From Setoptus koraiensis (lineage: Eukaryota > Animalia > Arthropoda), in contig CM106586.1 in NCBI GenBank assembly GCA_048013815.1, positions 15,066,169 through 15,130,000 of the forward strand: a stretch of DNA of 63,832 bases. The letters run 5' to 3'. The notes under the pieces are model-generated. The model was not told the origin of the DNA. It saw only the letters and a list, made by a program, of their open reading frames with translations, and made no database searches. Made by a program: the position numbers and the translations under genes. Positions 55,666 through 60,420 of the stretch are shown one piece after another (within the stretch, counting starts at the first letter, position 1; each line of letters opens with the position of its first letter).

Positions 55666-56091
55666 TTATACTCTTAACTTTAGGTCCTTGACTCTAAAGA
55701 CAGGATTACTTCTGATTGTGTCTGTAGGTTCCATCTTTGCTTCATAATATACTTGACTGAATAATTTCACTGAATTCACTATACTATTTAGTTGTTGTTG
55801 TTCGACGTTGAATATCCTTGATAGCACATAAGTATTCCATATGATTTGATCCGATTGATACAATGTTAATAGTCTATATAGTTTTGCTATTGTCAGGTTT
55901 CTAGGCACATGTCTATTAATGTCGTCGTTATTTGCTATTGGTGTTCCTAACTTGTCTGCAATGGGCACCGAGTCAACGTGTAGACTTTTAATTCTATCTA
56001 ATAGGTCCGCATCAATTTTATCAAATTTGGATCGTGTTGTTAAGCTCCTAGTGATAACATGTCGCATCGATATATTACCGAGACGTTCCAT
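55666..56091 (-). CDS. NDUFAF4: NDUFAF4-like complex I assembly factor (141 aa) with an atypical N-terminus
   Basis: LLDRIKSLHVDS and VPRNLTIAKLYRLLTLYQSDQIIWNTYVLSRIFNVEQQQLNSIVNSVKLF parallel the NDUFAF4 motifs LL..LK.VYVDS and P.G...i.eal.ll..h......Wt...i...y.l....v..ll.yf..F. Divergent from SMU1. Confidence 0.72.
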   Translation of the reverse strand: MERLGNISMRHVITRSLTTRSKFDKIDADLLDRIKSLHVDSVPIADKLGTPIANNDDINRHVPRNLTIAKLYRLLTLYQSDQIIWNTYVLSRIFNVEQQQLNSIVNSVKLFSQVYYEAKMEPTDTIRSNPVFRVKDLKLRV

Positions 56092-56646
56092 GATTACTTA
56101 ATGTGTTGAGTGATAAGTTAATTAGTTGCTAATTGAAATATTGTCATTCCATAATAGTAAGCCGAATAATAGAAGACTAGAATTTTCAAAGAAATGAGTG
56201 AGAAATCCAACGTGTTTTCCTCATGCTTTTTCTGACGCCATATGATTGATAATCTCTAGCAAAACTTCATCATATGAACGTGCTCATACAATTTCTCTGT
56301 TCTCTTTGATACTTTCGTAATATCTAGTTTCGACCGTGAGGGTCGCTTCAACACATTAGCTGTGTTCTGCTGTTTTGTGTTAGACACGACCAATATAAAT
56401 GTATGGCTACTGCTGAAGTAATCCATTATAAGTGAGTATGACAGAGAAGGTTGCGCAAAGACAAAAAACGCCGCCTTGCGGACAAATACTGCGAGACTCC
56501 TCTTATCAATACTTTTCAACTAACCAACACAAAAGAATCAAGTTGCATGTCGAAATTGTGGGCAACTTATAACTTTTAACTTATAATTTGGATCCCTTTA
56601 GATACTAAATCAATTGACAACTAAACAAGCACGGCGACCAACAACT

Positions 56647-58260
56647 ATGGCCACCATAGAGATTGAGCCCATGGACGTAATTCGTCTTATTGAACAATAT
56701 TTAAAGGAGAACAGTTTATTCAAGACATTACGGACATTGCAAGAGGAATCAGGTGTCAGTTTGAAGACAGTAGATTCTGTAGAGAGCTTTGTTCACGATA
56801 TTAATTCAGGTCGCTGGGATTTAGTTCTCAAGATAGTGCAACCGCTAAAATTAGCTGACAAGAAACTCATGGACCTCTATGAGCAGATATCCATAGAAAT
56901 GATAGAACAGGGAGAATTGGGCGCCGCTAGGCTGCTTATCAGAAGTACAGATCCAATGAAACAACTTAAAGAAGATCACCCAGACAGATATATACATTTG
57001 GAGAATTTGCTTGGTCGCAGTGGTTATTTTGACGCGCGTGAAGCTTATCCGGATGGTGGCTCCAAAGAAAAACGTAGGGCAGCGATAGCTCAGTCACTCA
57101 AGAATGAAGTGTCGGTTGTGCCATCCCAGAGACTACTGACATTGATTAACGACGCCTTGAAATGGCAGAAAAATCAAGGCCTCTTACCTCAGGGTACCTC
57201 AATAGATATATTTACTGGAAAGACTCAAATTAAAAAAATAGAGGACGAGGCGCCGCCAAATATGCTACACAAACAATGCATTGAGGCAACTCCACCTGAA
57301 ACTGAAGACGATGAGGACATTGCCGTTTTCTGCTCGCAATTCTCACCAGATGGACGCTATTTAGTAGTTGGATTCTCTTCTGGCATGATCGAAGTGTGGA
57401 ATCCGACCACGGGCAAACGGGCCAAAGATCTCAGATATCAGAGAGATAATCCAATGATGACTATCGAAAAGGATGATGACGGACAAAGACCCCTAGATGT
57501 AGCCGTATTTTCATTGTGTTTTAGCTCCGACTCTGAAGTTTTGGCAGCTGGTGATGGTGGCGGCAATTTAAGAGCATGGAGATTCCAAAGTGGTGAACGA
57601 ACTAAATACATTAAAAGTGCTCATTTGAAAACAGTCAGTTGCATCAAATTCAATCATGACAATTCTCAGATTTTGTCGGGAAGCCATGACACCACCCTTA
57701 GAATACACGGAATGAAGTCTGGACGTAAATTGAAAGAGTTTCGCGGCCACACATCATTCGTTAATGATGTCACATTCAATCATGATGGAACCAATATAAT
57801 CAGTGGCAGCAGTGACGGAACCATAAGAGTGTGGAACTCAAAAACTGCCGAGTGTATTCATACCCATAAGAGTGCCATAATGGATGTCAGAGTTCACACG
57901 ATCAGCTCAATTGGTAACTCAAAGAATGACTATATATTAGTTGGTACTCGATCCGATAGTATCAAAATATTGAAAGTGTATCAAGGAAAGATCTCCAAAC
58001 AGGAAATTATGAATTTCACAATCAAGAAGCCAGATAACGAACCCAAATCAAATATTGTTGCCTGTTGTGCCTCGCCCAAGGGTGAATGGATATACGCTGT
58101 TGATGACCGGAATTTATATTGTTTCAATTGTGAGAGTGGACTCGTTGAGAAAACAATAAGTGTTCACGAGAAGAGAACAATGGGCATCAGTCATCACCCT
58201 TTCCTGAATATGATAGCGACATTCGACGACATAGGAAATTTAAAATTATGGAAAGCGTGA
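56647..58260 (+). CDS. SMU1: WD40 repeat spliceosomal protein SMU1 (537 aa), intronless
   Basis: ATG 56647. IEIEPMDVIRLIEQYLKEN (LisH), YIHLENLL.R..YFDAREAYPDGGSKEKRRAAIAQ, EVSVVPSQRL..L...ALKWQ..QGLLP.GT.IDIF.GK, then WD40 repeats ending ...GNLKLWKA. Confidence 0.98.
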   Translation: MATIEIEPMDVIRLIEQYLKENSLFKTLRTLQEESGVSLKTVDSVESFVHDINSGRWDLVLKIVQPLKLADKKLMDLYEQISIEMIEQGELGAARLLIRSTDPMKQLKEDHPDRYIHLENLLGRSGYFDAREAYPDGGSKEKRRAAIAQSLKNEVSVVPSQRLLTLINDALKWQKNQGLLPQGTSIDIFTGKTQIKKIEDEAPPNMLHKQCIEATPPETEDDEDIAVFCSQFSPDGRYLVVGFSSGMIEVWNPTTGKRAKDLRYQRDNPMMTIEKDDDGQRPLDVAVFSLCFSSDSEVLAAGDGGGNLRAWRFQSGERTKYIKSAHLKTVSCIKFNHDNSQILSGSHDTTLRIHGMKSGRKLKEFRGHTSFVNDVTFNHDGTNIISGSSDGTIRVWNSKTAECIHTHKSAIMDVRVHTISSIGNSKNDYILVGTRSDSIKILKVYQGKISKQEIMNFTIKKPDNEPKSNIVACCASPKGEWIYAVDDRNLYCFNCESGLVEKTISVHEKRTMGISHHPFLNMIATFDDIGNLKLWKA

Positions 58261-58604
58261 ACTTAGATTTGGAAACTTTCCAATATGTTAGTTACGCTTT
58301 TTCCAGTCCATGGCTCGTCTGCCAACTCTACATGAAAAGCTATCTGACGATAATGTAATATAGATATTGTAAAATAGTAACGATTCTGCTTGTTATAATT
58401 TCAATTATGATGATCAATTTCGATTGGCCCTCCTGCTCATGGACTATAAATAGTATAAACTTAGCTGATGCAAAAATGATGTGATAGACAATTAGACTAA
58501 AAATCGATGATGTGATTGTATCAGGCCAAAAGCGTATGTTTTGTAATTTTACTACTACATAGGATTAACAATGGGTTTGAATAATAGTGTATAGCAGGCA
58601 TCGC

Positions 58605-59150
58605 TTAAAGCCTGATTTCGATAATGCCCTCGATATCCTCGTCTGCTGGCAAGGCAATTCTAGCCGGGTCAACAAGATTTTTGTCGATAAGTTCCAGACC
58701 AAGAGCTTCACGTTTGTGCAATTGTAGATAAGCCTCTCTTTTTGCCCACTCCATTAATCTATAATCGGGACAATAGAGGAATACCCAAAACGATGTTATT
58801 AAGAACAAACTGACGATCATAAATGTGTCAAAGTGAAAGAGGTATTTATCTGCTTCTGGATTGTGGTAATCGTAGCCATAGCTGAACCAGTTGCCATTAT
58901 TTTGTGGATTCTTGAAATCTTCAACTGTTCTAGGTCCAGGAGGATTGGGTGACACTTCGGGGTGCGTGTAAGTGTGACCTTTTTCGTCTTGAGGAAATCC
59001 CTTGTAATGTGCTCGTCTCACTTGAAGACCAATTTGACTAATAGAAGGGTAAAAATCCTGACCCCGATGATTCAAATTCAACGCTACGGGTCTCGTTGCT
59101 AGGCCTCTAATGAGAATATTCCTCATTAATTTATTACCTATACGTTCCAT
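58605..59150 (-). CDS. NDUFB11: NADH dehydrogenase subunit NDUFB11 (ESSS), 181 aa, intronless
   Basis: NWFSYGYD...D...F...TM...YCPDYRLMEWAKREAYLQLHKREALGLELIDKNLVDPARIALPADED is the characteristic NDUFB11 C-terminal motif. Basic amphipathic presequence. Confidence 0.95.
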   Translation of the reverse strand: MERIGNKLMRNILIRGLATRPVALNLNHRGQDFYPSISQIGLQVRRAHYKGFPQDEKGHTYTHPEVSPNPPGPRTVEDFKNPQNNGNWFSYGYDYHNPEADKYLFHFDTFMIVSLFLITSFWVFLYCPDYRLMEWAKREAYLQLHKREALGLELIDKNLVDPARIALPADEDIEGIIEIRL

Positions 59151-60420
59151 GATTACTTAGTGTAAAGGGTGCTCCGTTTCAGTTGATTGCTGATGATGGC
59201 ATAAATAAGAGAATCGATAATATGTGTAAACCTAATAATGATATCCGATAATAATATTACGAGCAATTCTGACCTCTGCAGTCTGTGTCTGCCTTTATAT
59301 AACCATATGATCGACCCAACATAAACGACAACATTTAAACGTGCTCACAAACACAAGGTCGATGGTCGACGCAACAACACTTCTCCTAGCCAACAATGGT
59401 GCCAATTTGAGACTTAAATGGTCTATCCAGTGAGTTCTTTTCGTTTTCCAACTGACAATTTTGGAGAGTAATAAATATTGGATAATCGATAGGCAAAGGT
59501 CGAGCGGTCCGCCAATCTGCTCACCCCTCAAACCATGTGAGTTTGGTGTGATAAGTTCGCGTAAATAGTGCGCGCTGCACCATTGTTCTTGCGTTAGAAT
59601 AAGCGCACATTTTGTCAATTTGTCCCATGTAGTTATTTTGCATTAATGGCGAGCGTCACTAGCGAAGAAAAATTAAGCGAGGGGCGCACTTATTTATGCA
59701 ATTTTTTCTTCGCACTTCAAATATTGTTCACATTCATTGAGTTTGCGTATAAAGTTGTGAAATTTTCATTTCAGCAAGGTAAATAAAAATGTATGTGGAG
59801 CTGTCTGCTGATAAAGCCCGATAAGATAGGGTTAGGGGGAAAGTGAAGTGGACACGGTCGCGAATTGAGTTTCACAAGTCGGGAGGCTGTTGCGGTTACC
59901 AACAGAAAGTTGCAATCAATAAATCTCTTCACCTGAGCCAATTTGAGCAAAAATCAAGCCGCGGCGATAAGTTGGCCCGTCCGCAACAGACATTGCAACA
60001 TTCACTTAAATTTTGTTTGTTCGCGTCGACTAGTTCACAGCAGCAAGCCGAGCGGCCAAGATTGTAACCCCTAATTATCTAGCTAATCTTGCCCATAACA
60101 CTGCTTACCTGTCAATCACTTTCCATTCTTGTGTTGTTTGTATCTACTGTTTTCGGCCAGAACAAACAGGCTCTGCGAGCCGCTGGCGATATTTGAAACA
60201 ACGTATCGTCTTGCCAAGTCAGAGCGTTCTTCAGGGTTGTCCGGTCACAGCTTGCAATTGGGCTGTTGCATAGGTCGCGTATTTTGCCTGCAATGTCACA
60301 AAAGAACTCATGCATGTTTTACATTTGTGTGACATTTGTCTAAAGAGAGAAACCGCCCGATCATATGGCAAGATCATCAATCAGCAGCAACATGTGCTGC
60401 CGACCACTCGAAGCGGCCCG

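What the first reader, a model, noticed from the sequence alone, without database searches (positions are those of the whole stretch)
55666..59163. Two unrelated complex I genes 3 kb apart share a homologous leader and presequence: NDUFAF4 appears to have captured the NDUFB11 targeting peptide
Seen: NDUFAF4-like starts acattaagtaatc-ATG MERLGNISMRHVITRSLTTR and NDUFB11 starts acactaagtaatc-ATG MERIGNKLMRNILIRGLATR. Ungapped identity is 12/13 nt upstream, 43/60 nt in the first 20 codons and 11/20 aa, after which similarity ends. The aatcATG part is also seen at other starts here, so only part of the upstream match is informative. Established, from memory: animal NDUFAF4 begins MG (a myristoylation-type start) followed by a conserved NFNxExRA...KPxxAPxH segment, which is missing here, whereas NDUFB11 normally has a cleavable presequence. 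Inference: a local duplication of the NDUFB11 5' end replaced the ancestral NDUFAF4 N-terminus, creating a chimeric gene with a new import route and perhaps shared regulation.
Basis: partly seen in the sequence, partly recalled or inferred. Interest (0 to 1): 0.75.

Follow-up and report, generated by a model that had tools for sequence, protein, structure and literature searches.

The report
Shared promoter-and-presequence module, two mitochondrial genes
Two unrelated mitochondrial-protein genes 3 kb apart in this small mite genome really do begin with copies of one ~280-bp front end (upstream region, leader and first ~25 codons). The recipient is not NDUFAF4 but a small mite-specific protein that most likely swapped one import signal for another.

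Summary
The 141-aa ORF (55666-56091, -) and ESSS/NDUFB11 (58605-59150, -) match at 12/13 nt upstream, 43/60 nt and 11/20 aa. Homology runs from about -205 to +75 around the ATG. Its signature motifs occur only at these two sites in the 48.7-Mb genome. A sister species has the same gene order and the same shared module, and site patterns group orthologues, so this was one old DNA-level partial duplication.

- A canonical NDUFAF4 (291 aa, full UPF0240 match, with its conserved N-terminal segment) lies elsewhere, at C2:5.87 Mb.
- The 141-aa ORF belongs to a separate family of 137-218-aa proteins with a three-helix domain only remotely like the UPF0240 C-terminus and MRP-L20.
- Most outgroup members have their own presequence-like N-terminus with a conserved LKSKDDE motif. 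That motif is missing exactly where the ORF matches NDUFB11.
- So NDUFB11 as donor is favoured (about 65-70%), and probably no new import route arose.

The scan has noted similar 5'-end swaps elsewhere in this genome; I did not verify them. It is a new member of a known kind.

The parts
55666..56091 (-). 141-aa ORF ('ORF A'). It belongs to a small-protein family of mite-like, intron-poor genomes, with a three-helix HTH-like core at residues ~65-118 that is remotely like the UPF0240 C-terminus and MRP-L20.
   Evidence: ORF. Sister-species orthologue P0001 is 77% identical. dN/dS is 0.33 overall. A profile built from outgroups only hits it at E 4e-23. Pfam UPF0240 gives E 0.012, 16 bits. The AlphaFold core has pLDDT ~80.
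56017..56091 (-). ORF A codons 1-25: presequence-like segment homologous to the NDUFB11 N-terminus.
   Evidence: The family motif LKSKDDE is absent here.
56092..56296 (-). ORF A copy of the shared upstream module. It holds the leader TAGCAACTAATT...TAAGTAATC next to the ATG, and the distal block GAGCACGTT...ATCATATGG...AAAAAG at 56238-56285.
56647..58260 (+). SMU1-like LisH + WD40 gene, head-to-head with ORF A. This pairing is ancestral.
   Evidence: Pfam LisH_TPL and WD40. It is 50% identical to the WD40 gene that lies head-to-head with the ORF A homologue P0011 in L007.
58605..59150 (-). ESSS/NDUFB11 complex I accessory subunit, 181 aa, single copy.
   Evidence: Pfam PF10183, 6e-16, 59 bits. 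It is the only hit above cut-off in the genome. The sister-species orthologue is 86% identical.
59076..59150 (-). NDUFB11 codons 1-25: the presequence shared with ORF A.
59151..59350 (-). NDUFB11 copy of the shared upstream module. The distal block GAGCACGTTTAAATGTTG...ATCATATGG...TATAAAG is at 59303-59349.

Best explanation
A segment of about 280 bp is present in two diverged copies: ~205 bp of promoter-proximal sequence and 5' leader, the start-codon context, and the first ~25 codons of an Arg-rich, acid-poor N-terminal peptide. One copy heads the complex I subunit gene ESSS/NDUFB11. The other heads a 141-aa gene of an unrelated small-protein family.

Shown here: the two copies are homologous at DNA level, are unique in the genome, and predate the split of this species from a sister species.

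Inferred: the copy arose by a local DNA-level partial duplication, or by ectopic repair using a template 3 kb away. It was not RNA-mediated, because it seems to include sequence upstream of a TATA-like element.

Inferred, with roughly 65-70% confidence: NDUFB11 was the donor. Its 5' module overwrote the native 5' end of the small gene, replacing a presequence-like N-terminus that carried the family motif LKSKDDE.

Inferred, untested: in both genes the module drives transcription and supplies a cleavable matrix-targeting presequence. The two proteins would then be imported by the same route and may be co-regulated.

The small protein is not NDUFAF4. It is a third, lineage-restricted protein with a three-helix domain distantly resembling the C-terminal domain of NDUFAF4 and fungal mL58. 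Its function is unknown. I expect a mitochondrial matrix protein, possibly an assembly or RNA-binding factor.
For: Homology and uniqueness.

Age:
- A sister-species contig (L003) has the same order ESSS / SMU1 / ORF A, and the same shared module in both genes.
- Parsimony-informative sites group orthologues 50 : 2 : 8.
- Within codons 1-25 the count is 5: 0: 0.

Both genes are functional. dN/dS is 0.33 for ORF A, and 0.10 for ESSS from the conserved RRAHYKGF segment (about codon 45) to the end.

ORF A identity:
- The exhaustive profile search finds six single-stretch relatives of 137-174 aa besides the sister-species orthologue, and the word search adds four more.
- A profile built only from outgroups hits ORF A at 4e-23 and the sister copy at 9e-22.
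- In the sister copy that alignment starts at residue 25, exactly where similarity to NDUFB11 ends.

Direction:
- Five of the six outgroup members with an N-terminal extension keep [ST][LFI]KSK[DHN]DE upstream of DLLxRLK. The sixth, P0012, has only SLKVDATE there.
- ORF A and its sister copy lack this motif in the stretch that matches NDUFB11.
- The ORF A-SMU1 head-to-head pairing is ancestral. The intergenic gap is 155 bp in the outgroup and 555 bp here, which fits an insertion of foreign 5' sequence.
- ESSS lies in different neighbourhoods in outgroups.

Canonical NDUFAF4 lies elsewhere.

The peptide's composition fits a presequence: +4 to +5 charge, one acidic residue, and S/T-rich in three of the four copies.
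Against: - Direction is not proven. NDUFB11 N-termini in outgroups are unalignable, so a loss on that side could not be seen.
- In this species ORF A residues 15-24 (RSLTTRSKFD) weakly resemble the family's RR.YSTLKSKDDE, which could mean its N-terminus is native. However, the sister copy and both NDUFB11 copies share RPxLN there, so the resemblance looks derived.
- No outgroup promoter shares the motifs.
- My crude hydrophobic-moment test did not separate the peptide from its own shuffles.
- No targeting predictor, transcript data or import assay was available.
- I found no remnant of an older ORF A first-exon sequence upstream.
Confidence: 0.62

Rival explanations
1. Reverse direction. The module is native to the 141-aa gene, whose family generally has presequence-like N-termini and which sits in its ancestral position next to SMU1. 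NDUFB11, newly placed beside SMU1 in this lineage, captured that promoter, leader and presequence.
For: - ORF A is in its ancestral synteny, while ESSS is in different neighbourhoods in outgroups.
- In this species ORF A residues 9-24 align weakly with the family's N-terminal profile.
- ESSS presequences are not conserved among relatives, so replacement there would cost nothing.
Against: - The conserved family motif LKSKDDE is missing from ORF A in both species.
- The sister copy does not align with the family profile before residue 25.
- RPxLN is shared by three of the four copies, so the RSKFD of this species is derived.
- The TATA-like ATATAAAG is intact in both ESSS copies and degraded in the ORF A copies.
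Confidence: 0.25
2. The 141-aa ORF is this animal's NDUFAF4, which lost its myristoylated MG/NFN N-terminus and gained a new import route from NDUFB11.
For: - There is a weak UPF0240 hit over profile positions 120-166.
- 17 of 30 ESM Atlas neighbours carry UPF0240.
- hhalign of the family against the genome's own NDUFAF4 gives E 4e-4, probability 34%.
Against: - A full-length UPF0240 gene with the conserved N-terminal segment exists at C2:5.87 Mb.
- BLASTP of ORF A against it finds nothing (E 7.7).
- None of the ten outgroup homologues retrieved (137-218 aa) shows the NFN segment, and six of them have an N-terminal extension of their own.
- The same domain hits MRP-L20 equally often, 8 of 12 members each.
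Confidence: 0.04
3. Convergence, or ongoing gene conversion. Either two presequences look alike because targeting peptides are compositionally similar, or the two genes are being continually homogenised.
For: - Targeting peptides share composition.
- The sister-species paralogues are slightly more alike (50/60) than those of this species (43/60).
Against: - Similarity extends through ~205 bp of non-coding upstream DNA and is unique in the genome, which excludes convergence.
- Site patterns support orthology 50: 2 (concerted): 8, and 5: 0: 0 within the shared codons, which argues against conversion since the species split.
Confidence: 0.05

Closest known systems
Presequence acquisition by duplication of an existing targeting signal in plants (rice rps11-1 from atp2, Arabidopsis sdh3 from hsp70, carrot rps10 from hsp22). 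Summarised in PMC2631504, which cites Kadowaki et al. 1996, PMC452489.
   Same: An unrelated nuclear gene for a mitochondrial protein starts with a DNA copy of another gene's presequence. The mature parts are unrelated.
   Different: - Here both genes are old nuclear genes of an animal, not recent organelle-to-nucleus transfers.
- The copy also carries ~200 bp of upstream sequence.
- No intron or exon shuffling is involved, as both genes are intronless.
- The recipient probably already had a targeting signal.
NDUFAF4 / UPF0240 (PF06784), complex I assembly factor
   Same: The three-helix core of the 141-aa protein (residues ~65-111) resembles the C-terminal ~50 residues of UPF0240. The resemblance is weak but recurrent.
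   Different: - It has no N-terminal two-thirds of the family.
- It scores below the gathering threshold.
- A separate canonical NDUFAF4 is present in the same genome.
Fungal mitoribosomal protein mL58 / MRP-L20 (PF12824) and the neugrin/RRG9 group
   Same: - Eight of 12 family members give weak MRP-L20 hits.
- The top structural neighbours are mitoribosome chains, including yeast and Neurospora chain 'a'.
- ESM Atlas lists RRG9/neugrin clusters.
   Different: - All hits are below threshold: Foldseek E is at least 0.35 and Z is 5-7, which is in the noise range for small helical domains.
- There is no Neugrin (PF06413) hit in the genome.
Other 5'-end / presequence swaps noted by this scan in the same genome: ERI3/ATP5B, NDUFV1/SDHB, COX4/GAPDH, NDUFS8/citrate synthase, PNPase/eIF3g, SCO1/mRpL22.
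   Same: The same kind of event: upstream region, leader and first codons copied between nearby genes, mostly genes for mitochondrial proteins.
   Different: - Those are unverified AI notes on other loci.
- This pair is older, predating a species split at dS ~0.35-0.55.
- This pair shows no sign of repeated copying.

Membership tests
NDUFAF4 / UPF0240 (PF06784), for the 141-aa ORF | Whole-protein score at or above the Pfam gathering threshold (25 bits) | tested here: not met
   16.1 bits, E 0.012. The sister copy P0001 has no hit.
NDUFAF4 / UPF0240 (PF06784), for the 141-aa ORF | Conserved N-terminal segment (profile positions ~1-110, the NFNxxNRA...KPxxAP region) | tested here: not met
   Only profile positions 120-166 align. 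The segment is present instead in the gene at L004:1456-2331, as RFNVDNRAQ...KPAPT, covering profile positions 6-171.
NDUFAF4 / UPF0240 (PF06784), for the 141-aa ORF | Being the genome's orthologue, with no better candidate elsewhere | tested here: not met
   A genome-wide six-frame search finds one hit above cut-off, at C2:5868762-5869232, which is not in this window.
NDUFAF4 / UPF0240 (PF06784), for the 141-aa ORF | Homology of the C-terminal helical domain | tested here: inconclusive
   - Eight of 12 family members hit UPF0240 at E <= 1, and one (P0011) passes at 29.1 bits.
- hhalign against the genome's own NDUFAF4 gives E 4e-4 but probability 34%.
- The second-best genomic hit of the family profile is the NDUFAF4 C-terminus, at E 0.83.
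- MRP-L20 hits are equally frequent.
ESSS / NDUFB11 (PF10183), for the 181-aa ORF | Pfam score above threshold over the ESSS domain with its C-terminal conserved region | tested here: met
   59.1 bits against a cut-off of 22.8, residues 84-158. The invariant PDY..W..RE....KRE.LG..ID.N.VDP.R..LP block aligns with four relatives.
Cleavable mitochondrial matrix presequence (the shared 20-25 residues) | N-terminal position, net positive charge, few acidic residues | tested here: met
   +4 to +5 charge and one acidic residue in the first 22 residues of all four copies; four to six S/T in three copies and one in the ESSS copy of this species.
Cleavable mitochondrial matrix presequence (the shared 20-25 residues) | Amphipathic helix, MPP cleavage site, actual import | tested here: inconclusive
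   The Eisenberg hydrophobic moment is no higher than in shuffles of the same residues. No MitoFates or TargetP was available, and import cannot be tested with these tools.
Presequence capture by partial gene duplication | DNA-level homology confined to the 5' end of two genes whose mature parts are unrelated | tested here: met
   Homology runs from -205 to +75 only. The proteins align only over residues 1-20. The mature parts belong to different families.
Presequence capture by partial gene duplication | Identifiable donor and recipient | tested here: inconclusive
   Loss of the family motif LKSKDDE in ORF A favours ORF A as the recipient. No intermediate species was available to polarise the event.

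The most novel reading that the evidence does not exclude
This pair is one instance of a genome-wide habit. In streamlined gall-mite genomes, short local duplications may repeatedly paste one gene's promoter-proximal region, leader and presequence onto a neighbouring gene. Unrelated mitochondrial proteins would then come to share expression and import 'cassettes'. That would be a route to co-regulation, and to repair of eroded 5' ends, not described in animals.
Probability: 0.3. Interest if true: 0.7.

Novelty: new member of a known kind. Interest (0 to 1): 0.45.

Why it matters
Copying of targeting peptides between genes is documented mainly for plant genes newly transferred from organelles. 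A clean animal example is uncommon: two old nuclear genes, with the promoter-proximal region included, conserved across a species split. It gives a natural experiment on whether presequences and 5' regulatory modules are interchangeable.

It also corrects an annotation trap. The 141-aa gene would easily be mislabelled NDUFAF4. If the other swaps noted in this genome hold up, the pattern would say something about how extremely compacted genomes maintain or rewire gene starts.

Tried and rejected
- **Structure from two sequences.** The prediction was useless (pLDDT 36). With 12 sequences only the three-helix core was confident.
- **Fold searches.** Foldseek and VIA-align gave only generic HTH/homeodomain and mitoribosome chains at non-significant scores. 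No fold-based assignment is possible.
- **PDB sequence and profile searches.** Nothing relevant.
- **Promoter motifs in outgroup loci** (L007, L009, L011, L013, L015). None found, so promoters could not polarise the event.
- **Remnants of an older ORF A N-terminal coding sequence** in the ORF A-SMU1 intergenic region. None found.
- **Hydrophobic moment as a proxy for a targeting predictor.** Uninformative.
- **Neugrin (PF06413) in the genome.** No hit.
- **MRP-L20 in the genome.** The best hit is a Tc1/mariner-like transposase HTH, which is irrelevant.
- **Bacterial-type promoter/terminator scan.** Not meaningful for a eukaryote.
- **One earlier-noted swap (NDUFS8/citrate synthase).** I found NDUFS8 at L018:8475-9125, but no citrate synthase ORF in the 18 kb I fetched.
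- **Whole-gene paralogy of ORF A and NDUFB11.** Rejected.
- **MERxGN as a species-wide start.** Rejected.

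
Full report
**Observation**

The window carries two intronless minus-strand ORFs 3 kb apart:
- a 141-aa ORF at 55666-56091, called 'ORF A' here;
- a 181-aa ORF at 58605-59150.

A LisH + WD40 (SMU1-like) gene lies between them on the plus strand, at 56647-58260.

The 181-aa ORF is ESSS/NDUFB11 (PF10183, 59 bits). 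It is the only such gene above cut-off in the genome.

BLASTP aligns only residues 1-20 of the two proteins (E 3e-5).

**Is it chance or a species-wide pattern?**

No.
- The 25-mer around the ATG, with two free positions and up to two mismatches, occurs only at these two places in 48.7 Mb.
- A protein-level degenerate pattern with the aatc context also hits only these two.
- MERxGN without that context has five hits genome-wide.

**Extent**

The homology is much longer than noted.
- Local alignments of the 400 nt upstream of the two ATGs, in this species and in a sister species, score 21-38 between paralogues. Shuffles give a mean of 11-12 and a maximum of 16-19.
- One conserved block lies next to the ATG: TAGCAACTAATT...TAAGTAATC.
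- A second lies at about -205 to -150: TGTGAGCACGTTTAAATGTTG...ATCATATGG...ATAAAAG.
- The composite GAGCACGTT-N(20-45)-ATCATATGG is found only at these two promoters in the whole genome.
- Downstream, similarity ends at about codon 25. The sister species has RPILN in ORF A and RPTLN in NDUFB11.

The shared unit is therefore about 280 bp: upstream region, leader, start context and presequence. It includes sequence upstream of a TATA-like element that is intact in both NDUFB11 copies. From this I infer a DNA-level rather than an RNA-mediated copy. No transcript data were available to confirm it.

**Age**

A Logan contig from another species (L003) has the same order, ESSS, SMU1-like, ORF A.
- Protein identity to this species is 86% for ESSS and 77% for ORF A.
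- Both of its genes carry the module.
- Across the four copies, informative sites support the orthologue grouping 50 times, the within-species grouping twice and the cross grouping eight times. Inside the shared codons the counts are 5: 0: 0.

The duplication therefore predates the species split (dS about 0.35-0.55). There is no sign of later gene conversion.

Both genes are under purifying selection. dN/dS is 0.33 for ORF A, and 0.10 for ESSS from the conserved RRAHYKGF segment (about codon 45) to the end.

**What ORF A is**

It is not NDUFAF4.
- A six-frame search of the genome with PF06784 finds one hit above cut-off, at C2:5868762-5869232.
- That gene is a 291-aa ORF covering profile positions 6-171.
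- ORF A scores 16 bits, below the 25-bit threshold, and only over profile positions 120-166.
- BLASTP of ORF A against the canonical gene finds nothing.

The exhaustive profile search and a word search recovered a family of 137-218-aa proteins: P0007, P0009-P0013 and P0016-P0019. All come from unnamed assemblies. The contigs I fetched for three of them are intron-poor.

A profile built from six outgroup members alone hits ORF A at 4e-23, so membership is solid.

The family core is a three-helix bundle, residues 65-118, with pLDDT about 80.
- Eight of 12 members give weak UPF0240 hits and eight give weak MRP-L20 hits. One member passes the UPF0240 threshold.
- hhalign against the genome's own NDUFAF4 gives E 4e-4 at 34% probability.
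- ESM Atlas neighbours are UPF0240, RRG9/neugrin and MRP-L20 clusters.
- Structural neighbours are generic HTH domains and mitoribosome chains at non-significant scores.

I read this as a lineage-restricted small protein whose domain is distantly related to the NDUFAF4 C-terminal domain and the mL58/neugrin group. Its function is unknown, and it is probably mitochondrial.

**Direction of the copy**

Five of the six outgroup members with an N-terminal extension have M..R..[YF] [ST][TN][LFI]KSK[DHN]DE upstream of the conserved DLLxRLK. The sixth, P0012, has only a degenerate version, SLKVDATE.

ORF A and its sister copy lack this motif in exactly the residues that match NDUFB11. In the sister copy the family-profile alignment begins at residue 25.

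ORF A's head-to-head pairing with SMU1 is ancestral.
- The homologue P0011 lies 155 bp from an SMU1 orthologue that is 50% identical to the one here.
- In this window the gap is 555 bp, which fits the arrival of about 280 bp of foreign 5' sequence.

Three things prevent proof:
- NDUFB11 N-termini in outgroups are unalignable.
- Outgroup promoters share no motif with the module.
- In this species, residues 15-24 of ORF A weakly resemble the native motif.

I put the direction at about 65-70%.

The replaced N-terminus already looked like a presequence, so the swap probably changed the label and the promoter, not the destination. Four family members (MSNGNH...) have no extension at all and sit next to DEPDC5. 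Targeting within the family may therefore vary.

**Function of the module**

This part is inferred. The peptide has a charge of +4 to +5 and one acidic residue, and is rich in S/T in three of the four copies. My crude amphipathicity measure was uninformative, and no targeting predictor or experiment was available. Shared regulation is plausible because about 200 bp of upstream sequence with conserved blocks is shared, but it is untested.

**Context**

Three features fit an eriophyoid (gall) mite:
- a small genome of 48.7 Mb;
- two large contigs;
- long intronless genes.

Published eriophyoid genomes have two chromosomes and more than 80% intronless genes (PMC11879100, PMC7738191). I did not verify the taxon directly.

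Copying of presequences between genes is established in plants (PMC2631504, citing Kadowaki et al. 1996).

The scan's earlier notes list at least six other 5'-end or presequence swaps in this same genome. I treat them as unverified leads. My one attempt to look at one of them found NDUFS8 but no citrate synthase within the 18 kb fetched.

**Verdict**

The duplication is real and the direction is probably as proposed. The 'NDUFAF4' label and the 'new import route' are not supported.
- It is a new member of a known kind, of moderate interest. Interest would rise if the genome-wide pattern is confirmed.

No spliced models were needed, because all genes concerned are single ORFs.

Noticed in passing
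window 56238-56250 and 59303-59315 (-); L003 about -161 from both ATGs: All four copies of the distal upstream block keep an ATG inside ATCATATGG, followed by a stop 3-6 codons later (MVI*, MASEKA*, MAT*, MMI*). This is either a conserved mini-uORF or a coincidence with a TATA-like ATAAAAG.
   Followed up: no
L009:10001-10417, L011:6387-6800: Four members of the ORF A family (P0010, P0016, P0018, P0019) start MSNGNH with no presequence-like extension. The two whose contigs I fetched (P0010, P0019) lie head-to-head with a DEPDC5/IML1 gene instead of SMU1. Targeting and synteny therefore vary within the family.
   Followed up: partly
window 60414-60464 / 60504-60554: Inverted repeat with 51-nt arms, 84% complementary, 39 nt apart, about 1.3 kb upstream of NDUFB11 in a stretch with no convincing ORF (I7).
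   Followed up: no
window 56400-56520 versus L003 about 4830-4950: The part of the ORF A-SMU1 intergenic region distal to the shared module is strongly conserved between the two species (GCGTTTTTTGTC...). It is probably SMU1 promoter sequence.
   Followed up: no
L004:1456-2331 (G000:C2:5868717-5869592): The canonical NDUFAF4 of this genome is 291 aa and starts MSYND, not MG. It has a long acidic/basic C-terminal extension beyond the UPF0240 domain.
   Followed up: partly
L017:1207-2409 (G000:C1:14938952-14940154): Intact 400-aa Tc1/mariner-like transposase ORF, found through a weak MRP-L20 HTH hit.
   Followed up: no
window 27962-37455: Six dispersed copies of a 55-nt segment, plus two 64-91-nt repeats at 92-93% identity (29551-29703 versus 30687-30874). 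They belong to a tandem gene family that another finding of this scan covers (D10, D14, D18).
   Followed up: no
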